This document shows, piece by piece, positions 2,367-20,000 of a DNA stretch of 64,000 bases (within the stretch, counting starts at the first letter, position 1; the number at the start of each line of letters is the position of its first letter). This DNA is from Heteronotia binoei. Taxonomy: Eukaryota. The DNA lies in contig NC_083230.1 of NCBI RefSeq assembly GCF_032191835.1, positions 72,354,001-72,418,000 on the forward strand, written 5' to 3'. The notes below the pieces were generated by a model that saw only the letters and a list, made by a program, of their open reading frames with translations, was not told the DNA's origin and did no database searches. Position numbers and translations under genes: made by a program.

Positions 2367-4287
2367 ATTAGTAATCCATTATCAATTAAGGTCCAATCGC
2401 TCCGCCATGACTGCCCTGCCAATTTAGATGCAGTAAGTGAACTCGAGGCCCAATGCATGTCTTCTGATTTAACCCTGGATTGCCTCGCCCCGCTCAGCTT
2501 GGAGGAAGTCGACAGAATACTTGGCACTGCACGATCCACAACTTGCGATCTGGACCCATGTCCCTCCTGGCTAATTAAGGCCTGCCAGGAGGAACTAAGG
2601 TGTCCTATACGGGACATCGTAAATCGATCCCTTTCAGAGGGTATTTTTCCAACACCCCTGAAAGAAGCAGTGGTCCGCCCTCTCCTGAAAAAAGTTACAT
2701 CAGACCCGGCCGAATTGGCACACTACCGACCGGTCTCAAATTTGCCCTTTTTGGGCAAAATTATTGAGAGGGCTGTGGCGTTGCAGTTACAGGATTTTTT
2801 GGAGGACGCTTCCACCCTGGACCCATGCCAGTCCGGCTTTCGCCCGGGCCATGGGACAGAAACAGTCTTGGTCGCCCTTATGGATGACCTCTGGCGGCAA
2901 CTGGACCGAGGCGGCTCGGCAGTATTGCTGCTGCTAGACCTGTCGGCTGCGTTCGATATGGTCGATCATCGGCTGCTGACCCGCCGCCTCGCTGACGCAG
3001 GAATTCGGGGGTTAGCCTTACAGTGGCTCTCCTCCTTCCTTGAAGGTCGGGGACAAAGGGTGGCAATTGAGGGGGAGCTGTCTCAGAGACACCCACTTTA
3101 CTGTGGGGTGCCTCAGGGGGCAGTTCTCTCCCCGATGTTGTTTAACATCTACATGCGCCCCCTTGCCCAGATTGCACGGAGGTACGGGCTTGGTTGTCAT
3201 CAGTACGCTGATGATTCCCAGATCTATCTATTGATGGACGGCCGGACTGGCAATGTCCCTATAAATCTGGACCGGGCGTTACAAGCCGTGGCTGACTGGC
3301 TCAGGCTGAGTGTGCTGAAGTTGAATCCGGCGAAGACTGAGGTCCTTTGCGTGGGCCGGGTCGGACCAGGAGGGGAGATCTCCCTACTGGCTTTTGACGG
3401 TGCGCCACTGATACCAGTGCGCAGGGTCAAGAGCCTGGGAGTGCTACTGGAATCCTCTTTATCAATGGAGGCCCAGATAGCTGCCACGGCTAGATCCGCC
3501 TTCTTCCACCTCAAGAGGGCGAGGCAGTTGGCTCCCTTCTTGGAATGCAGCGACCTAGCAACTGTGATCCACGCAACAGTCACCTCGAGACTAGACTACT
3601 GCAATGCCCTCTACATGGGGCTGCCCTTATGCCGAACACGGAAACTTCAGGTAGTACAGAACGCGGCGGCCAGGCTGCTGCTGGGACTACCTCGGTGGGA
3701 ACACATGCAGCCTGGGCTGCGGGACCTGCACTGGCTGCCGGTTGTGTACCGTGTTCGCTATAAGGTGCTGGTTATTACCTTTAAAGCCCTATATGGCCGA
3801 GGACCTGCCTACCTTAGGGACCGCCTCTCCCCATATGTTCCCCAGAGAGCACTGAGATCTAGCTCCCAAAACCTCTTAAAAATCCCTGGGCCAAGGGAGG
3901 CTAGACTGAAGACAACCAGGGAGCAAGCCTTTTCAGCAATGGCCCCTCGATGGTGGAATCAACTTCCAGAGATGGTGCGAGCCCTGCGGGACCTGAACCA
4001 GTTCCGCAGGGCTTGCAAAACCTCTCTGTTTCAGCTTGCCTTTGGGACAGAACCTGGTTAAACGGATCTGTAGCTATCCAGCCATCTTGTGCATGATTGG
4101 GATCTACAGCACTTTATAGCACCGTTTGATCCATCTAATTAACTATGTAACTGAATTGTATTTTAAAATTGTTTGTTTTATATTGTATTTTATTTATATC
4201 ACAGTGTTCCATGTCTGTGAGCCGCCCTGAGCCCGCCATCAGCGGGGGAGGGCGGGATATAAAAATAAACTTATCTTATCTTATCTT
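2367..4287 (+). mobile_element. 5'-truncated L2-clade LINE, young
   Basis: 10-bp TSD AAACAATTAA at 2357-2366 and 4288-4297; (TTATC)n tail; open RT ORF; CpGs retained; highly similar to the copy at 11764-16400. Confidence 0.92.
2457..4061 (+). CDS. L2 ORF2, reverse transcriptase and C-terminal part (endonuclease missing by 5' truncation)
   Basis: 534-aa ORF with CDLDPCPSWL, QSGFRPGHGTET, DLSAAFD, GVPQGAVLSP, YADD and SRLDYCN motifs. Confidence 0.9.
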   Translation: MSSDLTLDCLAPLSLEEVDRILGTARSTTCDLDPCPSWLIKACQEELRCPIRDIVNRSLSEGIFPTPLKEAVVRPLLKKVTSDPAELAHYRPVSNLPFLGKIIERAVALQLQDFLEDASTLDPCQSGFRPGHGTETVLVALMDDLWRQLDRGGSAVLLLLDLSAAFDMVDHRLLTRRLADAGIRGLALQWLSSFLEGRGQRVAIEGELSQRHPLYCGVPQGAVLSPMLFNIYMRPLAQIARRYGLGCHQYADDSQIYLLMDGRTGNVPINLDRALQAVADWLRLSVLKLNPAKTEVLCVGRVGPGGEISLLAFDGAPLIPVRRVKSLGVLLESSLSMEAQIAATARSAFFHLKRARQLAPFLECSDLATVIHATVTSRLDYCNALYMGLPLCRTRKLQVVQNAAARLLLGLPRWEHMQPGLRDLHWLPVVYRVRYKVLVITFKALYGRGPAYLRDRLSPYVPQRALRSSSQNLLKIPGPREARLKTTREQAFSAMAPRWWNQLPEMVRALRDLNQFRRACKTSLFQLAFGTEPG

Positions 4288-6284
4288 AAACAATTAAAAC
4301 AGTTTAAAACAATTTAAAAATTAAAACAATTTTGGTGCTAAAGTTGGTACGGTACGTTCAGCGATGTTGGGCATCTACATAGTTGGGCTGAAGGCCAGTT
4401 GAAATAGAGTTGTTTTGCAGGCCTTGAGAAACTGGGCAAGATCCCGCAAGGCTCTTACCTCTTCTGGGAGTTGGTTCCACCAGTGGGGGGCCGCAGTTGA
4501 GAAGGCTCTTTCTCTGGTAGCCTTCAGTCTTGCCTCCCTCGGTCCAGGGATTGACAGTAAGTTCTGCGATCCAGATCTAAGTACCCTCTGGGGAACATGT
4601 GGGGAGAGACAGTCCCTAAGGGCCCCTTTGCAATAATTATGGCTGGTCTTATGAAAAGTATAATAGCTATTGGAGGAAATGCTCTAATTCTGCTGGTTTT
4701 AACTATTTACTTGTGTATTTCTCTCAACCAAAGACTTTCAGCATGTTCAACCACAATCTACCGGCTTTGATGGCTATCATCATGGTTTAGCTAGTCACCA
4801 GATTTGTTTGGTTTGGCAGAAAAAAGTCCAAACAAGTTGCAGAGAGGTTTGTGGCCATATATTAGCCACACTTACTAGTATTTAGTGGCTAGAATCCATG
4901 AAGACAGCCAATCAGAGCAGTTCTTGCTTGTATCACAATTGGTTGCCTAGCAGAAAAATGCAAAGAAGAGCTTTTCTAGAAGAGTCTATCCTCCATCACA
5001 GGGATCACAGCAGATTTTGTTTTGGCAAGCAAAATGCAATGCTCTTGCTTTCTTTTGGGGGTGATTTGCACTGTGCTACATATTTTTTTAAAGATATGAA
5101 ACAATCTGCAAGGGAAAAATCTATACTTCCCGTGGTGCTTTGTAAAATCTTTCTTTCACACATACACACACCATCCAAACACATCGGCAGCTATTACCAT
5201 CGCTAAGAAATACAGAAAGCAACACTGAACTGTTGGTTTTTTTTAAGAGAGAGAGAGCCTTGAGTTGCCAGTCTATATGCTTCATGATTAATTTAATTCT
5301 ATGGTTTGGATGCAGAGCAAGAAGGTGCATATAGAAATGCCTAAGGTTGGGGGAAGAGAAGTGCACTGGGCTGTGTGACAATGCAAATGTGTGATGGTTA
5401 ATCATACAGTACCATGTTTCTTGAGAAGGAGTAAAGTTACCCCTTGAACATCTGCAAATGAGTTGCGAGAAGCTGAACCAATCATAGAATAATTGGCTGC
5501 CTGATCATATCAAGATGTGATACAAATTGGCTGGTGTTCAAGCATCCCTAATTTTTTTTGTCTTAAAGAATATGTTTTGCAGAAGTCTGCTGTTAGCTTA
5601 CATTTGTTTTGCATCTTCCTGTTTTTCTAATTTGGGCAAGGATGCCACTTTTAAAGAAAGCCTTTGGCTTTTGATGGCTTCTTTGGCTCTGCTCATTAAC
5701 CATCCACCCTGGTAGATCTGATGGTATATTTCCTCATCTGTGATATACATTCTATCTGAGCTTCAATTATTGTGGATTTAAATAACTTCCAAGTTTCCAG
5801 AAGAGATTTGACCTTCTTTACCGGCCCTTTCAACTTCCTTTTGACAAATCCCCCTATTTCTGAGAATTAAAAGAATGAAAAAGAACTCACAGGGGGGGAA
5901 AGCTGACAAATTCAGTCATCTCTAATTTTGACTCTTGTCTTTTTATAACATTTGAGACATTTCTAAGAGAGTATAGAGGTCAGTGGGCCAATATGTATAA
6001 TTTCCATTTTCAGTTGCCACACTGGTGTATGCACATGAACCATTATAATTGTTCAAATAACCTACTTTTTCATGCTGAAGTGCCCATATAAGAAAATAGT
6101 CCCCAGACCTGAGGAACAGGGCTACAATCCTAAGAACATATCCCTGGAAGAAATAAAATGTTTCTTCTGAGTATATCTGTTTAGGATTGCTCCCTCTGTG
6201 TACCAATAATTTTTATTACCATTAAATATTCCCACTTTTTTAAAAGGAAGAACTCAAAACAACTAATTCAAAACATTACCATCT

Positions 6285-6812: not shown

Positions 6813-7611
6813 AGAAGGTAGAATGCTTTTTACACATAATTAAAAACAACAGTCTTAGCCAATGATAGAGTTTGGGTTACAAAATACTTAGTATGTCATG
6901 TAACTGGAAGTCCTAATACAGGAAGGAGACTATGACAAAATGCTGAAACTTGATGGGATGACACTCACAACTGGAATATTAGAATTCAGGGTTAAAACTT
7001 ATTTAAAAGAGACAGGCAAATGAGAATCCGGCCCCTTCCTGCCCGCACTGCTGCTTGGCGGTATAGGGCGGGGGCCGCATTTGCCTCCCCAGATGGAGCC
7101 GAGGCAAACGGATCTCCGCCCATCCGGGTATGGCTGGGGGCGTGGACGGGGGCTTTATTGGCCCAGCCAAGCCTCCTGTGGCGCAGTTTCTCGGGCACTT
7201 TCGGCTGAACGGGAGCGTATTCCGACGCTCCAGCCGATCGGCCTGGGGGGCTTTGCTGCGGCGGCATTGGCGGTGCAGCGACGGAGCTGAGGAGCATGCT
7301 CCGCTTCCATCCCTCTTCCGTTTGAAGGCCTGAGGCCACACACTGGTGCAGCGTCGGGTTCCCCCCCCTCCTCAGCTTTGGTGGCAGTGATTTGGGGGTG
7401 AAGCAAGGGTTGGCTGCCCCCACCCTCCCTCCTCACAATCGCGGTGTTCTGGGGATTGTTGGAGGACATTCTGTGTGCAGCTGCAGGCTGCAGTACTGTG
7501 GCCTTAACCTTCTGGGTTCATTTCCCCCCTCCTCTCACCCCCCCCACCCCAAGGTTAGCTTTGGTGACACCCTTCCTCCTGCTTAATGTTGATAAGGGGT
7601 TTAAGGCAGAG

Positions 7612-9187
7612 CGATGGCTCCTAGGAAGGGACAGGGCAGGTCTAAGGGCAAGCAGCCCCTGAAGAGAGTGCCCGGAAGGCGCATGCCCACTGAGCACCCT
7701 GGGGAAGTAGATGAGGCACACACCAGGCGTGCTATAATTGAGCAGCTTGCTGCATTAGAGTGGCAACAGAGTTTGGTCCCTGGGTCAACGTGCCAGCTAG
7801 AGGGTGGAAGGCTGCACGGATCTCTACCAGGGCCTTCAAGCAGGAGGTCCTGGCACGTCTTTCTACTTTACAGGATATGACCATGCGGCCTGGTCCTTCG
7901 GGAGTGCCGAGCTGGGATCCACCGGACAACAACCCAGATGATGACGATGAGGTTAATAGTCTGGATGGGGCAAGTCTGGCGGATCTGGAGGTCCGGCGCC
8001 AGTGGTGTTAGCTGTTAATGCGGATGACTCTGATGGTAAGCATGTCTGCCGTGGTAATAATAGTGGGTGGCCCTGGGGGGGGGGGGGTTGGGGGCCCCTC
8101 TGCATTACGGGTGCGGCTGGCTCTGCGGCCATGTTCGGTACGGGATGTGTTCGGGGGTCACCTAATTTATCCTGTCTGTCAGGGGCTTGGGTCCCTGGGA
8201 CTCATGGGCAGGTTTTACCATGGGGGTCTGCTGAGGTGTCTTTGGTGGCTGCTACCCCATCTACCTCGTCCAGGGCTTTGACCCAGCAGTTATCGGTTGG
8301 GTCATTACCGTGGGGTCATCAAATGAGTGGGCAATGGCCAGCCGGATGGCCAGCCGCCCAGTGGGGGGGATGGGGCTTGGCCCCAACTCCCTATGGGGCA
8401 GTTCCTTTTCAGTGTCGTCCATTCGGTGACACCGCCATGCCCCTGAGGATCATTTGACAGTGTCTACCAGAGAAAAGATCTTGCGTGGGGAGTATGTGGA
8501 TGTTTTTAGCCTTCTCTATAGGGAACTCGAGAAGAAGGACAAGGACGAACTGGAGGATAAGGATAAGGAGACACTCAAGCGCAGAAAGATTGAGAGGAAT
8601 TGGGCCAACTGGTTAGCGGGGTTTTTGATTTATGCGGGGGTGATAGCGCGGGCACAGCCTTTACGGGCGGCTCCACTATTCCAATACTGCAACATCATTT
8701 ACAAGGCTTATACAGACTTTGCGGGTGCTGCATGGCTGCAGTACGACGAGGAGTTCCGTATGAGGGCAGCATTGAACCCCGCAATTCTCTGGGACCAGAT
8801 TAACCAGCAGCTGTGGCTGCAGCTCACGTCTCCGGCTAAGCCTAATACCGGTGGCAGGTCGGACAGCGGTCATCTTGTGAGTACAATACCATAGACCTTT
8901 ATTGGCATTAACATCTTGTGAGTAAACAGGCAAGTGTAGTGGGTCCCCGCACAGCAGTGGGGCAGTCGGTTCAACCCCGGCTGCTGTGTTGGGAGTACAC
9001 GTCGCAGGGCGTGTGCAATAGAAAAACGTGCAAGTACAAGCACGAGTGCCCGCTGTGTGGGGGTTCGCATGCATTATCGGCATGCAATAAATCCAAGCCC
9101 AGACCAGGGAATAAGCGGTCAGGTGGCAGCGGGAATACCCAATCAGCTAACAAAAGAGCCCAGCCCCATCAAGCTGATGGTACTTAA
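7612..9187 (+). pseudogene. gag-like ORF1 of the YR retrotransposon with C-terminal CCCH and CCHC-type fingers
   Basis: Starts MAPRKGQGRSK, then is frameshifted. It contains REKILRGEYVDVFSLL...WLQYDEEFRMRAALNP...W, typical of DIRS/Ngaro gag, and CWEYTSQGVCNRKTCKYKHECPLCGGSHALSAC. Confidence 0.8.
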
Positions 9188-9950
9188 GGATCTTTTGGCA
9201 GAGTACCCAAAGGTTGGGGACAGGGAGTATCTGTGGGAAGGATTTTGTTGTGGGTTTCGTATCCCATTCCAGGGCCCTAGAGGACCCTGTATGGCAAGGA
9301 ATTTACGTTCAATCCAGGGGATGGAACATGTGGTGAGGGATAAGATCGGGAAGGAGTGCAAGGAGGGCTGGATGTTAGGCCCTTTTGATGAACCCCCTGT
9401 CCCGAATTTGCAGGTATCCCCTTTAGGAGTGGTGCCCAAGAAGGCTCCGGGGGAGTTCTGGCTTATTCACCATTCGCCCTACCCAAAAGGGGGGTCGGTG
9501 AATGATGCCATTCCCGACTTCCTAGCTACAGTTCGGTATACCTCCTTCGACCAGGTGGTCAAAGTGGTATGGAGTTGTGGGATTGGGGCGGAGATGGCGA
9601 AATGCGACATTAAGTCTGCATTTTGCCTTCTGAAGGTGCACCCCGATGATTTTGAACCTTTGGGTTTTATGTTTGAGGGTAAGTTTTATATGGACAGGGC
9701 CTTGCTGATGAGTTGTTCCATCTCTTGTTCAGCTTTGAACGTTTTAGCACTTTTTTGGCTGGGTCCTGTGCGAACGGTTGGGCTCAGCTAATTCAGTTCA
9801 TTATCTGGATGATTTTTTGTTTGTGGGCCCGCGGGGGTCGGGTCAGTGTGCCCGGCTGCTTCAGTCCTTTTTACGGTTGGCTGAGGACCTGGGGGTCCCG
9901 CTGGCCCATGAAAAGACAGAGGGTTCTTCGTTAGTATTGACTTTTCTGGA
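9150..9950 (+). pseudogene. Reverse transcriptase of the YR retrotransposon
   Basis: SPLGVVPKK..GEFWLIHH, GGSVND, AKCDIKSAF and HYLDDFLFVG motifs. Frameshifted, with an apparent deletion after LTFL near 9947. Confidence 0.9.
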
Positions 9951-10414
9951 ATGCAGCAGGATTTTGAGGTATGGGAGCAGTTTTTGTCCTCATTTAATGG
10001 GGTTTCCTTTTGGCGCAAGGATATGAGAATTGAGGCTGATCGGACGCCGCTGGATCCATTGGTTTTGGGGTATACTTTCAAGGGCATTGGTGTGCTGAAA
10101 GTTGGCCCAGCGAATGGTTGGGCAGTGAACTATGTCGCAATTTGACCTTTCTTGAGTTTTTTCCTATAGTAGTAGCTGTTCAGTTATGGGGAGCGGAATT
10201 GGCTAATCATGTTGTGCATTTCTGGTGCGACAACATGGCTGTAGTTCATGTTATCAATACATTGACTTCTAAATCCGTTCTGGTTATGAGACTGGTTAGG
10301 GCATTCACTTTATGTTGTTTAAGTCTGAACATTTTATTTCTCGCTAAGCATGTGCCAGGTGTGTGCAATGGTGTGGCGGACACTCTGTCTCGCTGGCAGA
10401 TGGAGCGATTTTGA
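9951..10414 (+). pseudogene. RNase H of the YR retrotransposon
   Basis: TFLEFFPIVVAVQLWG...FWCDNMAVVHVIN...AKHVPGVCNGVADTLSR, a DIRS-type RNase H. Confidence 0.88.
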
Positions 10415-11163
10415 CAGCTTGCACCAGAAGCTGACCTCCTGCCGGCCCGGATGCCCCCAGAGATGTGGCAGCTTGGAGAGTGAGGCTGACTGGGCAATGA
10501 TGAGAGTTGAGGCTGACCGGGCAATGATGTTAGCTCTGGCTCTCAGTACCAGGAAGGCCTATAATCGCTCTGTTAAGCAGTTCCATGCATTTAGGGAACA
10601 GGTAAGGTTGGGCAGGCTTTGGCCCATTCCAGGGTCACACCTCATGCAGTTCTACGTCCATTTGAAAGGTAAGGAACTTGTAGTTAAGTCTATAAGGGCC
10701 AAGCTCGCAGCCTTAGCGTTTACAAGTAAAATACAGGGTTTTACGGACACTTCAAGTGATTTTAGGCTTTGTAAGATGTTGGAGGGTTGGGCCCGGGAGC
10801 AGGGCCCTCGGCCCGACACTCAGGAACCCCTTTTCACCTTCTGTTTTAAAGGGATTGCAGGCAGTTTGGCCTGGACTTTGCTCCTCAAAGTTCGAGGCTT
10901 TATTATTTCAGGCTGCAGCTATGACAGCCTTTTTCGGGGCGCTCAGGGTCAGCGAGCTTGTGGTTAGCTCTCACCATGACTCTTCTGGCCATTCCCTTCA
11001 GTCTGGTGATTTGAAAATACAGGGTGATTGTGTATCTATTAAGGTTCAACAGTCTAAGACCGATCAGAAACAGAGGGGTACTGTTATCACCTTTGGTTCG
11101 TGCCTAGATCAGGAAATTTGCCCTGTGATCACCCTGAAGAGGTATACTGCAGCAAGGGGAGAT

Positions 11164-11400
11164 AATAATAATAATAACATTTTATTTATATCCCGCCCTC
11201 CCCGCCAAAGCAGGCTCAGGGCGGCTAACAACATCTCAATCCATACAATAAATTATACAACAGGTTTTAAAATCACATTCACTTAAAACATTCCAATTAA
11301 AATTAACATTCCTGGTGCTACTCTATTAGACATAAATATTATGGCAGAATCACTTAAGGCGAATCATCAGTTGTTCAGTCAGTTAAAGGCCATCCTAAAA
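11164..11400 (-). mobile_element. Severely truncated L2 3' end inserted antisense in the YR ORF
   Basis: (TTA)n tail, the L2 terminal motif GCCGCCCTGAG...GGGCGGGATATAAA, and ORF2 end FRMAFN* on the minus strand; putative AGAT TSD (11160-11163 / 11453-11456). Confidence 0.85.
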
Positions 11401-11453
11401 AGGTTGCCCCATGCCGTGTTTTGTTCAATAAAGTTGCCCTGTTTATTTACCCA
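11401..11453 (+). repeat. Captured copy of the Ngaro 3' end (matches 17400-17452)
   Basis: 52 of 53 bases identical by direct comparison. Confidence 0.95.
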
Positions 11454-12019
11454 GATGAGGCCGGCCCCTTATTTTGTCATGAGGACCAGTCACCTTTGAC
11501 CAAGTTTCAGTTCTGGACCATCACCAGCAGGGCCTTGAATAGGCTAGGGCTGGGTGGGGTCAAATTTGGTACCCACTCTTTTCGCATTGGGGCAGCATTT
11601 ACAGCGGCTGCTATGGGGTATCCTGGAGCAGCCATTCAGAGAGTGGGCCGTTAGCGGTCCACAACATATAAGGGTTATGTTGCCCATTGGATACCCAACA
11701 GGCTGATGTTTGATATGTTGTTTCCAGTTTTGTGTGGTTCACGTTGTTCCTTTCTATTTTTTATAATAATAAATAAATAAATAAATAAATTTTATTTTTA
11801 TATCCCGCCCTCCCCCACCAAAAGGCGGGCTCAGGGCGGCTCACAGACATGACTACGTCATGATTCAATTAAAAGCAGATAAACATTATGAATACAATAC
11901 AATTACATATATAGATTAAAATACATAAAAATAGGTGCTATAATTTCTGATGTCACAATTACATATTATCAGCTTCAGTTACAACATAAGATGGCTAGAG
12001 TTAGAATGATTTTATCAAG

Positions 12020-14999
12020 TTAGTCTGGTCCTAATTCAAATGCGAGTTGGAAAAGAGAGGTTTTGCAAGCCCTGCGGAACTGGTTCAGGTCCCGCAGGGC
12101 TCGCACCCCCTCTGGGAGTTGATTCCACCAGCGCGGGGCCACTAATGAGAAGGCTTGCTCCCGAGTTATCTTCATTCTAGCCTCTCTTGGCCCAGGGATT
12201 TGTAGGAGGTTTTGGGAGCTAGATCTTAACGCTCTCCTGGGGATATATGGGGAGAGGCGGTCCCTGAGGTAGGCAGGTCCTCGGCCATATAGGGCTTTAA
12301 AGGTAATAACCAGCACCTTATACCGAACGCGGTAGACGACCGGTAGCCAATGCAGATCCCGCAGCACCGGCCGCACATGTTCCCACCTAGGTAGTCCCAT
12401 CAACAGCCTGGCCGCTGCGTTCTGCACTACCTGAAGTCTTCGCGTTCGGCACAAGGGCAGCCCCATGTAGAGGGCATTGCAGTAGTCTAGTCTTGAGGTG
12501 ACCGTTGCGTGGATCACAGTTGCTAGGTCGTCGCGTTCCAGGAAGGGAGCCAACTGCCTCGCCCTCTTGAGATAGAAGAAGGCGGATCTTGTGGTGGTAG
12601 CTATCTGGGCCTCCATTGATAGCGAGGATTCCAGTAGCACCCCCAGGCTCTTGACCCTGCGCACTGGTGTCAGTGGCGCACCGTCAAAAGCTGGCAGAGT
12701 AATCTCCCCCCCCCGGTCCGTCCCGACCCACGCAAAGGACCTCAGTCTTCGTTGGATTCAACTTCAGCCCGCTCAGCCTGAGCCAGTCAGCCACGGCCTG
12801 TAACGCCCGGTCCAAATTTGTAGGGACATCACCAGTCCGGCCTTCCATCAATAGATAGAGCTGGGTATCATCAGCGTACTGATGACAACCAAGCCCATAC
12901 CTCCGGGCAAGCTGGGCAAGGGGGCGCATAAAGATGTTAAACAATGTCGGGGAGAGAACTGCCCCCTGAGGCACCCCACAATGAAGCGGGTGTCTCTGAG
13001 ACAGCTTCCCCCCAATTGCCACCCTTTGTCCCCGATTTTCAAGGAAGGAGGAGAGCCATTGTAAGGCTAGCCCCCGAATTCCTGCGTCGGCGAGGCGGCG
13101 GGTCAGCAGCCGGTGGTCGACCATGTCGAACGCCGCCGACAGGTCGAGCAGCAGCAATACCGCCGAGCCGCCCCGATCCAGTTGCCGCCGGAGGTCATCT
13201 ATGAGGGCGACCAAGACTGTTTCCGTCCCATGGCCCGGGCGAAAGCCAGACTGGCATGGGTCCAAGGTGGAAGCGTCTTCCAGAAAATCCTGTAACTGCA
13301 ACGCCACAGCCCTCTCTATAATTTTGCCCAAAAAGGGCAAATTTGAGACCGGCCGATAATGTGCCAATACGGCCGGGTCTGATGTAGCTTTTTTCAAGAG
13401 AGGGCGGACCACTGCCTCTTTCAGAGATGTTGGGAAAACACCCTCCGAAAGAGATCGATTTATAATGTCCCGTATAGGACATTTCAATTCCTCCTGGCAG
13501 GCCTTAATTAACCAGGAGGGACATGGGTCCAGATCACAAGTTGTGGATCGTGCAGTGCCAAGAATTCTGTCAACTTCCTCCAAGCTGAGCGGGTCGAAGC
13601 AGTCCAAGGTTACATCCGAAGACACGCATTGGGCCTCAAGTTCACTTACTGCGTCTAAATTGGCGGGGCAGTCGTGGCGGAGCGATTGGACCTTATCTGC
13701 AAAAAACTTCGCAAAAGCCTCGCAGCCTATCTCCAATTCCTTAGCTTTTGGGTTGCCCTGTGGCAGTGAAGTAAGGTTCCGAATTATTCTAAACAATTGA
13801 GCTGGGCGCGAATTTGCAGATGCAATCTTGGTCGCAAAGTATGTTTTCTTTGTGGCCTTGATTGCCATCTCATAGGTCTTCATAAACTTCCTATAAGATG
13901 TTCTAGTCGCTTCGTCGCGGGTACGCCGCCATTGCCTCTCTAGCCGTCTAAGGCCTTGCTTCAGCCGGCGCAGTTCCGGGGTATACCACGGAGCCGGCTT
14001 AGTCCGAGGCCGCAGAGGACGCCGAGGTGCAATCTCCTCGATGGCTCTGGAGAGCCGATTATTCCAGGACTCAACCAGGCCATCGAGAGAGGTGCCAGAG
14101 GGCCAGGGATCCCGCAGAGCCATTTGGAACCGTTCCGGGTCCATCTGGCTCCGCGGGCGAGCCATAATAGGCTCCTCGCCTAAACAGGTTTGGGGAGGCA
14201 AGTCTACACGGGCCTTGAGGGCAAAGTGATCCGACCATGGCACCGCCTTGGCGGTTATATCGCTCACAACAACCCCGGCCGCAAAGATCAGGTCTAACAT
14301 GTGACCAGCCTGGTGAGTGGGGGTTACAACAAGTTGAGAGAGTCCCAGTGTCGCCATGGAAGACACTAGGTCCATCGCCTGACTGGAGGACGGGTCATCA
14401 GCATGGACGTTGAAGTCACCCAGGATTATCAACCTTGGGTGCTCCAACGCCCAGCCCGTCGCCGCCTCCAGTAGGGATGGTAAGGCGCTGGCTGGTGCGT
14501 TAGGCGTACGGTACACCAGCCAGACCGCCAACCCCTCTCCAGCCTCCCACGCCAGGCCGGCACACTCAATACCTTCAATCTTTGGGGCCGGGAGTGCCCT
14601 GAAGGAGTAAGCCTCCCGTACAAACAATGCCACCCCTCCCCCCCGCCCACTAGTCCGTGATTGATGTAGGACTGAGTAACCTGGAGGAGTTGTTTGCGCG
14701 AGGGCCACTGTCTCACCCTCCCGGGTCCAGGTTTCAGTCACGCAAGCCAGGTCCATATTTTGTTCGAGAAGAAATTCTCGAAGAATTGAGGTCTTATTAT
14801 TAATGGACCTGGCGTTGCACAACACCAATGACGGAGGTGGGTTATTCCGTCTGGCCCTGCTACCTGTCTCCCTTGGGATGGGACGCAGACTGGAAGAGGA
14901 CCGAGCACTGTCTTGTCTCTGTCCTCTTCCCTTATAATATCTGCTCCCACCGCTGTATCTCCCCCTCCCCAGGAGCACTGGGATCCCTGAGCCTGCCAT
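12020..14999 (-). CDS. L2 ORF2 (APE endonuclease + RT), intact except for one frameshift in a G/C homopolymer near 12706-12714
   Basis: 771-aa ORF with LCNARS, ACVTETW, VYRTP, GDFN and SDH endonuclease motifs plus DLSAAFD, GVPQG and YADD, continued by a 214-aa ORF (SRLDYCN...FRRACKTSLF). Confidence 0.9.
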
Positions 15000-16379
15000 C
15001 TCTCGCTGGTGGCAACTGCTAAGTTCACCACTATCAGATTGGAATCAAGGATATTCCACTAGCTCGACCCACTAGGTCCTGATAATCTAATTGACCCACA
15101 AATTTGAGAATCTTCCCTCCCTCAGTTTCTTATATATATTTGGTAAATTGACTCCTGTAGCAAATTAATTTAATCCCTCCCACTATTTTAAATTAACCAG
15201 CTAAAATTCATACAATTCAGTCCAGCTAAGAAATTCATACAATTCAATCCAAATATACAATAAATTACTCTAATGTGTCAATTAATAACAATCCAATTTA
15301 TCAGTAGGTTACGAGGTGCAGTTGTAAAGTGCAGTGCAAAATCCTCTCATAAAGATAGTGAGGTAGCAACAGAGTACTGTGGGTATTGCTGCAAAGATGT
15401 TTAGCAGTCAATGTAGGTTAAAGTGCAATGGCAGGCCAATGTGGGTTAAAGTGCAATGCAACGCCAGAGTTCCAGTCTAAAACTTTAGCAGCAGAGTTGT
15501 TATATAGATGTTCTTTAGATGTTCTATAGATGTCCTGTGTGGTTTTGTTGGTCGTAGGCTCTGAATACCAGATCTTGTGGTAAGGGGACTACCCGATGTT
15601 TCCTGCATAGGCTGGTGGGTCCGCAGTGAGTAAAAACCCCCCACGTACTCCCCTCGCCACGCAATGGGGTCCCCTCCCGCTTTGTCTATAGGGGCGACCA
15701 GTTCGTAGTTGGCCCCATTCAGCCTATACATCCCGTCGCAGACCACCCAGTTCACCTGCGTCAGTTGACCGCGTCGCTGATTCCACCCTCGGCTCCAGTC
15801 TCAGCCCTCTTCCAACGCAAACCAGCAGCTCCGGCCTCCGTCGACTGCCGGACCGCGGCGTCAATTCCACGCTCGGCCCGGGCGTTCGTATCACTGTCCC
15901 GGTCGGTCGGGCCGTAGTCCACTCCGCCGCCGCCGCAATTTCCAGCTGGCAGGCACCGCCCCCAGTCCAACTCAGTTGTTCGGCGTTCGATGTTGGGGCG
16001 TTCGGCGTTGGGGCGTGCCTCGCGGCCGCCGGGCACAGCGTCAGCCTCGGCGTCAGTGCCAATTCCACCTCCAGTCCATCGCCCGGACCGCCGCCGCAGT
16101 TGGTTTATCAAACACCGCACGCTGCCTCGACTATGGTCACGGTCGGGCTGGAGCCGGAGCAGATCTCACCCCGGCTAGACTCGGCGTTTCAGCGTTTCAG
16201 ACTCAGCGTTTCAAGCCGGCGTTAGAGGCGTTCCCTTGGCACCCCGACTCTCCCAGGTAGTCCGTTGACTCACCCCCTACCAGGGATTGATATCAGTCTG
16301 TCTGGTTCTCTCAGGAAGTGGTGAAAATATAAGAAAAGGACCCTATTATCAGGAGCTCTAGCACCTGAGCTCCTGCCTA

Positions 16380-16400
16380 GGTCGCCATCTTGAAACCGAC
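16380..16400 (-). promoter_or_regulatory. YY1-like motif (CAAGATGGCG) at the L2 5' end; putative internal promoter
   Basis: The plus strand reads GTCGCCATCTTGAAAC. YY1 sites are known at LINE 5' ends (L1); function here is inferred. Confidence 0.5.
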
Positions 16401-16441
16401 ATAAGCCAATCTTACAATGTTCTAAGGAACATCCTGACAAC

Positions 16442-16505
16442 CTGGGTGGCTCGCCCTATCCGGACAGGGAAGGGTCAGGGAGTTTGGCCTATCTGGGAGT
16501 TTTAG
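16442..16505 (+). repeat. Captured copy of the Ngaro 3' end (matches 17338-17401)
   Basis: 64 of 64 bases identical by direct comparison. Confidence 0.95.
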
Positions 16506-17092
16506 CTGCTGTGGCGCGGCGTGAGAGGCGGAGGATTCTGATCGCTGGCCACAGCATGGTGTTTTGGGCAGCCCACCAGGCCCGGTGTTCACCAATTGGA
16601 TCGCAATTGGGGCTCAGTGAGTGGGCTGTGGTTGAGTGTCAGGGGCATCAGGGCCTTCAGTGGTCCGGGCTCCTGCCTCTCCTTTTCCAAGGGAGGAATG
16701 GTCCTCTGCCTCATGTTTTGGTTATCCACCTTGGTGGTAATGATCTTGGCTTGCTGAAGGGGAAGGCCCTTTCACTGCAGGCGATTGAAGACCTCAGAGT
16801 GATACAGAGCAGGTGGCCCGAGGTGCTGATTTTGTGGTCCACCATCCTTCCCCGCAGGGTTTGGAGGGCTGCCTGGGACCCTGCAGGGATCGAAAGGGCT
16901 TGGCACAAGGCGATTAAGAAGGCACTGTGTGGAGGCTTAGGTGTTTACCTGCCTCATCCTGCTATAAGGTTGGAGTCGGCGGACCTATATTGGCAGGGCG
17001 GCATCCACCTGTCCGTAAAAGGTAACAGGGCATTTTTGCTTGAACTATGGCTGGGGCTTCGGTTGGCCCAACCGGTGGGCCCAACTGCCTAA
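16506..17092 (+). CDS. SGNH/GDSL-family esterase-like ORF of the YR retrotransposon
   Basis: ILIAGHSMVFWA (block I Ser), VIHLGGNDL (block III), WSTILPR, and LYWQGGIHLS (block V, with the usual Asp apparently replaced by Gly). The frame is open for about 195 codons and has no ATG upstream of the catalytic Ser. Confidence 0.82.
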
Positions 17093-20000
17093 GTGGAGGC
17101 TTGGCATTGTGGTGGCAGGGGTTTGATTTGGGCTATGTAGTTAACCGGTGAGCACCCGTTTCAGGGAAAGTAGTGGGCTGGGACAGCAGCTGGGCTGTAT
17201 GGCTCTGTGCGGTGATGCCCGCTATAGGGTTCCCTCCTCTGGCTGGCCACTCCTGAGTGGGCGGCATTGCCACTTGGGGGTATTCCCGGCCTTTGCCGGC
17301 CTAGCAGTAGCCAGTACAAACTGGCTACTGCCGGGGGCTGGGTGGCTCGCCCTATCCGGACAGGGAAGGGTCAGGGAGTTTGGCCTATCTGGGAGTTTTA
17401 GGTTGCCCCATGCCATGTTTTGTTCAATAAAGTTGCCCTGTTTATTTACCCAATACAACGTGTTGTCTCATTCTTCCAACTGGGGGGGGCAAAGGGCAGA
17501 GGCATAGCAATATATGTGAAGGAGGTATATACTTGTGAGGAAATATGTGAATCTGAGCATGGCAGCTCAGTTGAGAGTCTCTGGGTAAAAATAAAAGGAG
17601 TAAGAAATAATAGTGATATTATTGTGGGGGTCTGCTATAGACCACCAAGCCAGGCAGAGGACTTGGATGAGATACTCCTATAACAGTTTGCAAAGGTCTC
17701 CAAAAGAAGGGATACAGTGATCATGGGAGATTTCAATTACCCAGACATCTGTTGGAAGTCCAACTCTGCTGAAAATGAAAAGTCAAATAGATTCCTGACT
17801 TGTCTAGCTGACAACTTCCTTTTCCAGAAAGTGAAGAAGGAAACAAGGGGATCTGCTATCTTGGGTTTGATTCTCACTAACAAGGAAGAATTGATTGAAG
17901 ACGTGGAAATAGTGGCACCCAGGGCAGTAGTGACCATGTGATTTTGGAATTTACAGTCTTAGGGAAGGGGAAAGCTATACGTAGTCAGACTTATAGATTG
18001 GACTTCAGAAAGGCAAACGTTGATAAACTTAGAACTATGCTGGGTAATACCCCATGGTCATAAATACTTAGGAGGAAGGGGGTTCAGGAGCGGTGGGAGT
18101 TTCTTAAAAGCAAAATACTGAAAGTGCAATCATAGATGATTCCTATGAGAAGAAAAAATGAAAAAAAGTCTAAAGAAGCCAAAGTGGCTTCATAAACAGC
18201 TCTCTAAAGACTTGAGAAATAAAAAAAATAGTCTTTTAGGAATTGGAAGGAGAGCCTTATAACCAAGGATGAATATAAACAAATCACCAGTGCTTGTAGA
18301 TAAAAAGTTTGGAAAGCTAAAGCTCAGTATGAGTTTAGGCTGGCAAAAGATGCTAAAAACAAAAAAAGGGTTCTTTTCTTACGTTCAGAGTAAAAAAAAG
18401 ACCAAGGACTTGGTAGACCCATTGTGAGGGCAAGAAAGTGAAATTTTAACAGGTAATGAAGAGAGAGCAGAACTGCTCAATTCCTACTTTTCCTCAGTTT
18501 TCTCTTCTGAGGGAAACGATGCTCAACATGGCAAAAACAGAACATATAAGAAGGGTATGAAGTTCCAACCTAGGATCAGCATAGGGGTAGTACATAAACA
18601 CCTAGTTTCTTTAAATGAAACTAAATCCTCAGGGCCAAATAAATTGCATCCAAGGGTTCTAAAAGAGCTTGCAGATGTAATTTCTGAACCTCTGGCTATT
18701 ATTTTTGAGAATTCTTAGAGAACAGGAGAGGTGCCGGAAGATGGGAGGCGGGCAAATGTTGTCCCCATCTTCAAGAAGAGGAAAAAAGATGATCTGGGTA
18801 ACTACCAACCCGTCAGCTTGATGTCTATATCTGGAAAAGTTTTAGAACAAATCATCAAATAGTCAGTCCTGGAACATTTAGAAAGAATGGCTGTGATTAC
18901 TAAACCAGCATGGGTTTCTCAAGAACAAGTCATGTCAGACTAACCTGATCTCTTTTTTTGAGAAAGTGACTACCTTGCTGGATCAGAGGAATGCTGTAAA
19001 CATAGTTTATCTTGATTTCAGTAAGGCTTTTGATAAGGTTCCACATACTATCCTTGTTGACAAGTTGGTAAAATGTGGTATCCTGTTACCATTGGGTGGA
19101 TCTGTAACTGGCTGACAGATCGCACCCAAAGAGTGCTTGTGAATGGTTCCTCATCCTCATGGAGAGGAGTGACAAGTGGAGTGCCTCAGGGATCTGTCCT
19201 GGGACCTGTTTTGTCCAACATCTTTAAAAAATGATTTGGATGAACGAATAGAGGGAATGCTTATTAAATTTGCCGATGATACTAAATTGGGAAGGGTTGC
19301 AAATACAATAGAAGACAGAAACAGGATACAGGATGACCTTGGCAGGCTGGAAAACTGGGCTAAAATCAATAAAATGAATTTTAAGAGAGATAAATGTAAA
19401 GTTCTGCATTTAGGTAGGAAAATTCCAATGCATGGTTATTGGATGGGGGAGACTTGTCTTAGCAGTAGTATGTGTGAAAAGGATCTAGGGGTCTTAGTGG
19501 ACCATACACTGAACATGAGTCAACAGTGTGATGCAGTGGCTAAAAAGGCAAATGCAATTTTGGGTTGTATCAACAGAAGTATAGTGTCCAGATCACGTGA
19601 TGCAATGGTATCACTTTACTCTGCTTTGGTAAGACCTCACCTAGAGTATTGAGTTTTGGGCACCACATTTTAAGAAGGCTCTAGACAAGCTGCAACGGGT
19701 CCAGAGGTGGGCGACGAAGATGGTGATGGGTCTGGAACCAAGTCCTATGAGAAAAGGTTGAAGGAGCTTGGGATGTTTGGCCTGGAGAGGAGGTGGTTGA
19801 GAGGTGATATGATCACCATCTTCAAGTACTTGAAGGGCTGTCATAGAGAGGATGGTGTGGAATTGTTTTCTGTGGCCCCAGAAGGTGGAACCAGAACCAA
19901 TGGGTTGATATTAAATCAAGAGTTTCTGGCTCAACATTAGGAAGAACTTCCTGACAGTTAGAGCAATTCCTCAGTGGAACAGGTTTCCTTGGGAGGTGGT

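What the first reader, a model, noticed from the sequence alone, without database searches (positions are those of the whole stretch)
7021..17487. Squamate Ngaro-like tyrosine-recombinase retrotransposon with an accessory SGNH esterase and no visible split direct repeats
Seen: gag with CCCH/CCHC fingers, RT, RNase H, YR and a fifth SGNH ORF; no methyltransferase; insertion into CR1 without a TSD. Known: Ngaro elements normally have A1...B1-A2-B2 split direct repeats, and SGNH-bearing Ngaro elements are described mainly from amphibians. By eye I find no repeat of the 5' end near the 3' end, only a 7-bp inverted match (AATGAGA at 7019-7025 / TCTCATT at 17466-17472). Inference: either a reptile lineage with a different terminal architecture and replication route, or a recombined or truncated copy.
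Basis: partly seen in the sequence, partly recalled or inferred. Interest (0 to 1): 0.8.

Follow-up and report, generated by a model that had tools for sequence, protein, structure and literature searches.

The report
Damaged Ngaro retrotransposon, one repeat lost
This is an old, broken copy of an ordinary lizard Ngaro retrotransposon with an SGNH esterase gene; it seems to lack the family's split repeats only because one repeat set was lost, and two LINE insertions inflate it to 10.5 kb.

Summary
The anatomy was misread.

- **Size.** The 10.5-kb span holds about 5.4 kb of Ngaro. The rest is a near-full-length minus-strand LINE (11764-16441) and a 290-bp LINE-tail insert inside YR (11164-11453).
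- **Ends.** The true ends are 7027 and 17490, inserted into a CR1 reading frame with only a 2-bp AA overlap.
- **Termini are authentic.** The 5' end aligns to repeat A of a gecko relative. The 3' end aligns to the last ~70 nt of repeat B in four relatives.
- **Relatives are canonical.** Ten young copies in Eublepharis and Rhineura have A1...B1-A2-spacer-B2. Two nearly identical siblings have A1-internal-B, which is the window's architecture.
- **Reading.** The copy is a derivative that lost B1/B2's intervening A2, not a new terminal design.
- **Missed repeats.** A 64-bp and a 53-bp direct repeat exist. They are adjacent pieces of B copied to the 5' junctions of the two LINE inserts. Their origin is unexplained.

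The scan has noted SGNH-Ngaro copies elsewhere in this genome, both with and without split repeats. Interest is low.

The parts
7027..17490 (+). Whole inserted block: Ngaro element plus two nested insertions. One AA dinucleotide is shared with the target (7025-7026 and 17491-17492).
   Evidence: The native CR1 sequence ...GGCAAATGAGAAAGGGCAGAGG... is seen uninterrupted in a contig of run X2 (tables 7 and 8). The CR1 frame is continuous across the insert. Sequence read.
7027..7613 (+). 5' terminal region: an A1-equivalent repeat at the very end, then the 5' UTR.
   Evidence: W 7070-7142 aligns to repeat A of L001 (5096-5171), z=8 against shuffles, colinear with the start of A at about 7030. The terminal motif AA|TCCGGCCCC resembles AAT|TCGGCTCTCCC in L002.
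7614..9178 (+). gag-like ORF1, broken: N-terminus 7614-7760, core 8448-8879, CCCH and CCHC zinc fingers 8912-9178. A conserved splice donor lies at 8035|8036.
   Evidence: tblastn with the intact gag of L008: 76% over 144 aa in the core and 54% over the finger region. Donor GATG|GTAAG read and compared with the exon 1 end of the Eublepharis gene model.
8946..10477 (+). RT (YLDD) and RNase H, with a stop, frameshifts and a 243-bp deletion at 9948 (pol residues 354-434 of the relative are missing).
   Evidence: pol 20-353 maps to 8946-9948 and pol 435-615 maps to 9948-10477. Colinear DNA match to L001.
10324..11163 (+). Tyrosine recombinase, N-terminal SAM-like part and first half of the catalytic domain.
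   Evidence: Pfam Phage_int_SAM_1. tblastn to L008 YR residues 4-275.
11164..11400 (-). 5'-truncated LINE 3' end with an (ATT)n tail, inserted into YR.
   Evidence: It interrupts an otherwise contiguous YR: L001 9695 joins 9696 across it. The tail matches LINE tails at 11772-11850, 2272-2326 and 4211-4263. Sequence read.
11401..11453 (+). X1: a 53-bp copy of part of repeat B, sitting as filler at the 5' junction of the small LINE insert.
   Evidence: 98% identical to 17400-17452, E 7e-20. Absent at this position in relatives.
11454..11763 (+). YR C-terminal part (HxxR and catalytic Tyr region, 11454-11681), then the polypyrimidine tract of the SGNH splice acceptor.
   Evidence: Pfam Phage_integrase. 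63% over 90 aa to L008 YR. Sequence read.
11764..16441 (-). Nested, near-full-length non-LTR retrotransposon (LINE) with an APE+RT ORF2 at 12020-14999 and an (AAAT)n-type tail at 11764-11795.
   Evidence: Pfam Exo_endo_phos 2.6e-12 and RVT_1 8e-37. A second copy at 2387-4288 is 90.6% identical. The 5' limit is inferred from where the B-derived repeat starts.
16442..16505 (+). Y1: a 64-bp copy of part of repeat B at the 5' junction of the big LINE. Its last 6 nt (TTTTAG) coincide with the native splice acceptor or TSD.
   Evidence: 100% identical to 17338-17401, E 1e-27. Relatives have no such sequence upstream of the SGNH exon.
16506..17092 (+). SGNH/GDSL esterase exon. GHS and GGND motifs are kept. 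The Asp of the DxxH block is replaced (GGIH).
   Evidence: Pfam Lipase_GDSL_2. 68% over 170 aa to L008 SGNH. 62-69% to Eublepharis proteins. The exon start equals L001 9964.
17093..17490 (+). Short spacer after the SGNH stop, then a single copy of repeat B (its start, about 17112, is estimated only from the relatives' stop-to-B1 spacing). It holds a perfect hairpin at 17300-17335, Y2 at 17338-17401, X2 at 17400-17452, and AATAAA at 17426-17431 with CA at 17451-17452. No A2, spacer or second B follows.
   Evidence: 17415-17485 aligns to the last ~70 nt of B in L001, L002, L003 and L008 (z 5.6-13.5). Hairpin. No other repeat found.
17491..18400 (+). Flanking CR1-type LINE ORF2 (endonuclease domain). 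This is the target of the insertion, not part of the element.
   Evidence: Translation KGRGIAIYVKE...VGVCYRPP...[10 protein letters not shown]. Hundreds of related contigs were laid here.

Best explanation
The block is one old, inactivated copy of a canonical squamate Ngaro-type tyrosine-recombinase retrotransposon: gag, RT/RNase H, YR, and an SGNH esterase expressed from a spliced message.

It integrated by YR recombination into a CR1 at a 2-bp AA core, which left no TSD. Its family normally carries A1-internal-B1-A2-spacer-B2. This copy keeps an authentic A start and an authentic B end but has only one B.

The likeliest cause is homologous recombination between the two ~400-bp B repeats. That removes B1/A2/spacer, the counterpart of solo-LTR or solo-AB formation. 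With A2 gone, A1 has no partner, so no split repeats are visible.

Later, two LINEs inserted on the minus strand, one in YR and one in the SGNH splice acceptor. Each carries a short filler copied from repeat B at its 5' junction.

- Shown: the domains, the nested insertions, the termini, the single B, and the canonical relatives with single-B siblings.
- Inferred: that the loss happened by B1 x B2 recombination, and its timing.
- Inferred: that a single-B copy cannot rebuild its ends. Its transcript should end at the poly(A) site 38 nt before the B end, and no internal B-A junction remains as a template.
For: - Domain map against the intact relative L008.
- YR is contiguous across the 290-bp insert, and the YR end joins SGNH across the LINE, when compared with L001 and L002.
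- The LINE has APE+RT domains.
- Clean insertion into CR1 with an AA overlap.
- The 3' end is homologous to the end of B in four families, and the 5' end to A of L001. Junction motifs are shared...GGCAA|TCCGG in the window against ...GGCAAT|GCGG and ...ACAAT|TCGG.
- Canonical split repeats in 10 of 12 young copies from Eublepharis and Rhineura.
- L006 and L009 are A1-internal-B and are 99.8% and 99.6% identical to canonical siblings.
- Distance from the SGNH stop to the element end is 398 bp in the window. One B plus its spacer is about 450 bp in relatives.
- Recombination products of Ngaro repeats (solo AB) are reported in Cafeteria (PMC8547959).
- Unchecked same-genome notes list both repeat-bearing copies (6.1-7.3 kb) and repeat-less copies (5.5-6.0 kb).
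Against: - No other copy of this subfamily from the window's own genome could be examined. The runs found hold 8% or less of the words and are other organisms. That this subfamily has canonical repeats therefore rests on relatives about 67% identical in DNA and on unchecked notes.
- The A homology is significant for only one of four reference families.
- The time and mechanism of the loss cannot be told from the structure. It could be post-integration recombination or integration of an already reduced circle.
- The two B-derived fillers meet at the same nucleotide. The explanation does not account for this.
Confidence: 0.8

Rival explanations
1. The copy never had B1-A2-spacer-B2 in the chromosome. 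Recombination between the two B copies (or the two A copies) took place in the extrachromosomal circular DNA. That produced a one-unit circle, A-internal-B, which still contains the B|A junction, and the YR integrated this reduced circle normally. Single-B copies would then be primary, dead-end integration products rather than later deletions.
For: - Both ends are authentic and the insertion is clean, with a 2-bp core.
- The single-B siblings L006 and L009 are very young, 99.6-99.8% identical to canonical copies, and have normal core-flanked ends.
- 2 of 12 young copies is a high share for post-integration loss.
Against: The structure is identical to that of a post-integration deletion, so nothing here separates the two. 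430-bp identical repeats 350 bp apart are also good substrates in the chromosome. Circular double-stranded intermediates are a model, not an observation, for these elements. For DIRS-1, linear single-stranded cDNA is reported (PMC7192593).
Confidence: 0.15
2. A squamate Ngaro lineage has a different terminal architecture, with no split repeats, and therefore a different way of restoring its ends.
For: - No A2 in this copy.
- Other first-reader notes in the same genome also report complete-looking copies without visible split repeats (unchecked).
- One Xenopus family, DIRS-54_XT, is reported without split repeats (PMC9210276).
Against: - The ends are homologous to A and B of canonical relatives.
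- Repeat-bearing and single-B copies coexist within one subfamily at over 99.5% identity in two genera. The single-B state is therefore a derivative, not a lineage trait.
- Same-genome notes also list complete A1...B1-A2-B2 copies with SGNH.
- The predicted poly(A) site lies 38 nt inside B, so the end problem that split repeats solve still exists.
Confidence: 0.04
3. This is an assembly artefact. The two identical B repeats were collapsed by the assembler, which removed A2 and the spacer.
For: Identical ~400-bp repeats 350 bp apart can collapse in short-read assemblies. No reads of this individual were available.
Against: The window has no N in 64 kb. It resolves the 100%-identical 64-bp repeat and two LINE copies. 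Chromosome-scale assemblies of two other species show the same single-B form beside resolved canonical copies. This copy is old, so its two B repeats would have diverged.
Confidence: 0.03

Closest known systems
Ngaro-like families with an SGNH hydrolase ORF in Xenopus (DIRS-53_XT, DIRS-54_XT; PMC9210276)
   Same: gag, RT/RNase H, YR and a fourth SGNH hydrolase ORF after YR. No methyltransferase. Split direct repeats A1...B1-A2-B2 are present in DIRS-53_XT and in the squamate relatives. DIRS-54_XT also lacks visible split repeats.
   Different: The host is a squamate. The squamate relatives have a ~170-bp unique spacer between A2 and B2, and repeats of about 170-205 bp (A) and 420-440 bp (B), against 236 and 152 bp in Xenopus. 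In squamates SGNH is modelled as a spliced Gag-N fusion. This copy has one B only.
Annotated 'uncharacterized protein LOC...' loci of Eublepharis macularius and Rhineura floridana (L001-L013)
   Same: Same gene order. 62-69% SGNH identity and about 67% DNA identity over gag-RT. Homologous A start and B end. L006 and L009 have the same A1-internal-B form.
   Different: Those copies are young with intact ORFs. The window copy is decayed, carries two LINE insertions and a 243-bp pol deletion, and comes from a different subfamily and species.
Solo AB repeats of Cafeteria Ngaro elements and solo LTRs of LTR retrotransposons (PMC8547959)
   Same: Loss of part of a retroelement by recombination between its own direct repeats.
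   Different: Solo AB and solo LTR forms lose the coding interior through A1 x A2 or LTR x LTR recombination. Here the interior stays and only the B1/A2/spacer segment is lost, through B1 x B2.
DIRS1-like and PAT-like YR retrotransposons
   Same: YR-mediated integration without a TSD at a 2-3-bp core. Same gag and RT/RNase H genes.
   Different: DIRS1-like elements have inverted terminal repeats, an internal complementary region and a methyltransferase domain. PAT-like elements also encode a methylase (PMC7192593). None of these features is present here.

Membership tests
Ngaro superfamily (DIRS order) | Encodes a tyrosine recombinase instead of a DDE integrase | tested here: met
   Pfam Phage_int_SAM_1 and Phage_integrase on the pieces. 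48-63% identity to the intact YR of L008, including the HSFRIGAA region.
Ngaro superfamily (DIRS order) | Gene order gag, then RT/RNase H, then YR, without a methyltransferase domain | tested here: met
   Colinear map to L008. No methyltransferase hit in the window pieces or in the intact L008 ORFs, and the pol ORF ends right after RNase H.
Ngaro superfamily (DIRS order) | Split direct repeats A1 ... B1-A2-B2 | tested here: not met
   In this copy there is one B and no A2. The feature is met in 10 relatives. The same defect occurs in siblings L006 and L009 of canonical copies, so I read it as secondary loss.
Ngaro superfamily (DIRS order) | Integration without a target-site duplication, at a short core shared with the circle junction | tested here: met
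   The uninterrupted CR1 sequence and the window flanks leave only a shared AA. Relatives share AAT or CAA cores.
Ngaro superfamily (DIRS order) | RT/RNase H groups with Ngaro reference elements (for example Ngaro1_DR) in a phylogeny | not tested
   No Repbase or Dfam reference sequences are available in the tools. Classification rests on architecture and on the relatives' repeats.
SGNH-bearing Ngaro subgroup | Extra ORF with an SGNH/GDSL hydrolase domain downstream of YR | tested here: met
   Pfam Lipase_GDSL_2. 37 homologues, nearly all squamate.
DIRS1-like superfamily | Inverted terminal repeats, an internal complementary region and a methyltransferase domain | tested here: not met
   The only inverted pairs are short, 71-81% complementary matches, none of them terminal. 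No methyltransferase.

The most novel reading that the evidence does not exclude
The two B-derived fillers may be captured traces of Ngaro RNA. X1 ends at a CA 21 nt after AATAAA, a predicted poly(A) cleavage site. Y1 starts right after a perfect 12-bp-stem hairpin (17300-17335) and ends in a 6-nt microhomology with the target. The two pieces abut at one nucleotide in B.

This fits second-strand priming of each LINE insertion on sense Ngaro RNA, from its 3' end in one case and from a microhomology in the other. Copying would stop at a block and then switch to the LINE cDNA. If so, LINE 5' junctions record the 3' end and pause sites of a YR-retrotransposon transcript.

Separately, single-B copies might be direct integrations of reduced circles.
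Probability: 0.2. Interest if true: 0.5.

Novelty: new member of a known kind. Interest (0 to 1): 0.22.

Why it matters
It matters little for biology at large. It does correct the reading that squamate Ngaro elements lack split repeats, and it shows that SGNH-bearing Ngaro elements are widespread in lizards, not mainly amphibian. It also gives annotators a simple rule: A-internal-B copies about 0.75 kb shorter than their siblings are single-B derivatives, found in 2 of 12 young copies sampled. The only open point is the origin of the two abutting B-derived fillers at LINE junctions.

Tried and rejected
- **The Y and X repeats as split repeats.** Rejected. Their order (X1...Y1...Y2X2) does not fit A1...B1A2B2 on either strand. 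X1 interrupts the YR frame. Both sit exactly at LINE 5' junctions. Relatives lack them at those positions.\n- **A LINE-mediated processed retrocopy of Ngaro mRNA.** Rejected. There is no tail, the ends extend beyond the predicted poly(A) site, and there is no TSD.\n- **A 6-bp TSD GGCAAA.** Rejected. GGCAA at the 3' end is the conserved end of B, and the native CR1 sequence leaves only AA shared.\n- **RNA structure of Y alone as a stall site.** Not significant, z = 0.45. Only the hairpin upstream of Y is clear.\n- **Other copies from the same genome through sequencing runs.** The runs held 8% or less of the words and belong to other organisms. They gave the CR1 target sequence but no Ngaro termini.\n- **Lookups that gave nothing usable.** The P0028 lookup found nothing. 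L007, L014 and L015 were too rearranged or old to score.\n- **Literature.** No open paper found describes SGNH-Ngaro elements in squamates.


Full report
**What is in the span.** ORF listing, repeat search and composition show that 7021-17487 is not uniform. Plus-strand coding pieces run from 7614 to about 11700 and from 16484 to 17092. Between them, the minus strand carries a 771-aa ORF at 12684-14999.

Pfam gives weak but coherent hits on the plus-strand pieces: RVT_1, RVT_3, Phage_int_SAM_1, Phage_integrase and Lipase_GDSL_2. On the minus-strand ORF it gives strong Exo_endo_phos and RVT_1 hits. That ORF is a LINE, and a second copy of it lies at 2387-4288, 90.6% identical.

**Relatives.** A protein search with the SGNH ORF returned 37 hits, almost all annotated genes of squamates. 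They come from Eublepharis macularius (62-69% identity), Heteronotia, Gekko, Rhineura, Sceloporus and Elgaria.

I fetched 15 loci. An intact Eublepharis copy, L008, encodes four ORFs:
- gag of 518 aa, ending in CCCH and CCHC fingers;
- RT/RNase H of 624 aa;
- YR of 356 aa;
- SGNH of 198 aa.

It has no methyltransferase domain.

**Map of the window copy.** Mapping these proteins and the L001/L002 DNA onto the window gives a colinear but decayed element:
- gag N-terminus at 7614-7760, core at 8448-8879, fingers at 8912-9178;
- RT at 8946-9948;
- a 243-bp deletion at 9948;
- RNase H up to 10477;
- YR at 10324-11163, continuing at 11454-11681;
- SGNH at 16506-17092.

L001 position 9695 joins 9696 across window 11164-11453, so those 290 bp are an insertion in YR. 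The insertion is a LINE 3' end with an (ATT)n tail plus 53 further bases.

The YR end and its polypyrimidine tract (to 11763) are separated from the SGNH exon (from 16506) by the 4.7-kb LINE and 64 further bases. The Ngaro portion is therefore about 5.4 kb.

**True ends and target.** Contigs of four runs were laid on 16200-17700. They gave no copy from the same genome. One contig of run X2 matches 17491-17692 with 6 differences, and immediately before that it carries ...AAAAGGGACAGGCAAATGAG.

The uninterrupted CR1 therefore reads ...GGCAAATGAGAAAGGGCAGAGG..., which translates as LFKRDRQMRKGRGIAIYVKE. The window's flanks give the same frame on either side.

The insert is 7027-17490, with one AA shared between the two junctions. 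There is no TSD, as expected for YR recombination at a short core. The relatives share AAT or CAA cores in the same way.

**Are the ends authentic?** The last ~70 nt (17415-17485) align to the last ~70 nt of repeat B in four reference families, with z of 5.6-13.5 against shuffles. The alignments end within 5-9 nt of the end of B.

At the 5' end, 7070-7142 aligns to repeat A of L001 (z = 8), colinear with the start of A at about 7030. Cross-controls (5' end against B, 3' end against A) are not significant.

The junction motifs agree: the window has ...GGGGGGCAA|TCCGGCCCC, L001 has ...GGCAAT|GCGGCAC, and L002 has ...ACAAT|TCGGCTC.

**The family architecture.** Self-comparison of the loci shows canonical split repeats in L001-L005, L008 and L010-L013:
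- A1 of 170-205 bp at the 5' end;
- B1 of 420-440 bp right after the SGNH stop;
- A2 overlapping B1 by about 3 nt;
- a unique spacer of about 170 bp;
- B2.

All of these repeats are 98.5-100% identical within a copy.

Two loci have none. L006 (Rhineura) is 99.83% identical to L003 from the start of A1 to the end of B1, and then the flank begins. L009 (Eublepharis) relates to L008 in the same way, at 99.58%.

These are A1-internal-B forms, which is the window's architecture. In the window, 398 bp lie between the SGNH stop and the end. That is one B with its short spacer and nothing else.

First-reader notes from the same genome list both complete A1...B1-A2-B2 SGNH copies (6.1-7.3 kb) and complete-looking copies without split repeats (5.5-6.0 kb). 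The size difference is what the loss of A2, spacer and one B would give. These notes are unchecked and I used them only as leads.

**Mechanism.** The simplest route is recombination between B1 and B2, which deletes B1/A2/spacer. Recombination products of Ngaro repeats (solo AB) have been reported in Cafeteria (PMC8547959).

The same product would arise if the exchange happened in a circular intermediate and the reduced circle, which keeps the B|A junction, was then integrated. The structure cannot separate the two routes.

The predicted poly(A) site is AATAAA at 17426-17431 with CA at 17451-17452, conserved in L008. It lies 38 nt before the end of B. A transcript therefore lacks the end of B. 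In the accepted model for these elements, the internal B1-A2 junction supplies the missing ends (PMC9210276, PMC7192593). I infer that a single-B copy is a dead end.

16442-16505 equals 17338-17401 (64 bp, 100%). 11401-11453 equals 17400-17452 (53 bp, 98%).

In B the two are adjacent, overlapping by the dinucleotide AG. Each displaced copy lies at the 5' end of one of the two minus-strand LINE inserts, in the opposite orientation to the LINE.

They are not split repeats, for three reasons. The order fits neither strand. One interrupts YR. Relatives lack them at those positions.

Their edges are suggestive:
- Y begins 2 nt after a perfect hairpin at 17300-17335.
- Y ends in TTTTAG, which matches the native splice acceptor and target.
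- X ends at the predicted poly(A) CA.

One reading is that the second-strand primer of each LINE insertion first copied sense Ngaro RNA and then switched to the LINE cDNA. Alternatives are filler copied from the nearby DNA, or 5' transduction from source LINEs lying in another Ngaro. None of these explains well why the two pieces meet at one nucleotide. I leave this unexplained.

**Comparison and verdict.** This is a Ngaro-type element of the SGNH-bearing kind described in Xenopus (PMC9210276). It is present in many squamates, although I found no open paper saying so.

It fails the split-repeat criterion only as a secondary loss that siblings of canonical copies also show.

The finding is an ordinary damaged copy, so interest is low.

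Noticed in passing
window 11401-11453 and 16442-16505 (sources 17400-17452 and 17338-17401): Two adjacent pieces of the element's 3' repeat B are copied, in inverted orientation relative to the LINEs, to the 5' junctions of two separate minus-strand LINE insertions. In B the pieces abut at one nucleotide. Their outer edges coincide with a hairpin base and a predicted poly(A) site.
   Followed up: partly
window 11764-16441 (minus strand): Near-full-length LINE with an APE+RT ORF of 771 aa followed by a 214-aa ORF. It has an AT-rich spacer with 27-28-bp tandem units at 15204-15464. A YY1-box-like AAGATGGCGAC lies about 50 nt from its 5' end (16381-16391, minus strand).
   Followed up: no
window 8035|8036 and 16505|16506; L001 6414|6415 and 9963|9964: NCBI gene models in Eublepharis, Rhineura, Elgaria and Heteronotia (325-347 aa) splice the gag N-terminus in frame to the SGNH exon, skipping RT, RNase H and YR. 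The window keeps the donor GATG|GTAAG and an acceptor TTTTAG| in the same phase. This resembles a subgenomic message, as other first-reader notes proposed.
   Followed up: partly
L001 11192-11361, L002 11167-11336, L003 10263-10481, L008 10258-10431: In all canonical squamate copies A2 and B2 are not adjacent. A unique spacer of about 170-220 bp lies between them, unlike the textbook B1-A2-B2 drawing.
   Followed up: no
window 17300-17335: Perfect 12-bp-stem hairpin (GCAGUAGCCAGU / ACUGGCUACUGC) inside repeat B, upstream of the poly(A) signal. It dominates the centroid structure of the 3' region.
   Followed up: no
window 9948: Clean 243-bp in-frame-sized deletion that removes the linker between RT and RNase H (pol residues 354-434 of L008).
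   Followed up: no
L011 309-1716: A second, partial Ngaro 3' end of another subfamily (SGNH end plus B-A-B, with B copies 98.6% identical) lies about 2.4 kb upstream of the complete element in the same Eublepharis locus.
   Followed up: no
window 16506-16862 and 17322-17372: Contigs from three other organisms (runs X5, X9, X10) match the SGNH N-terminal half and a short part of B at 80-95% identity. Related SGNH-Ngaro families therefore exist in those species too.
   Followed up: no
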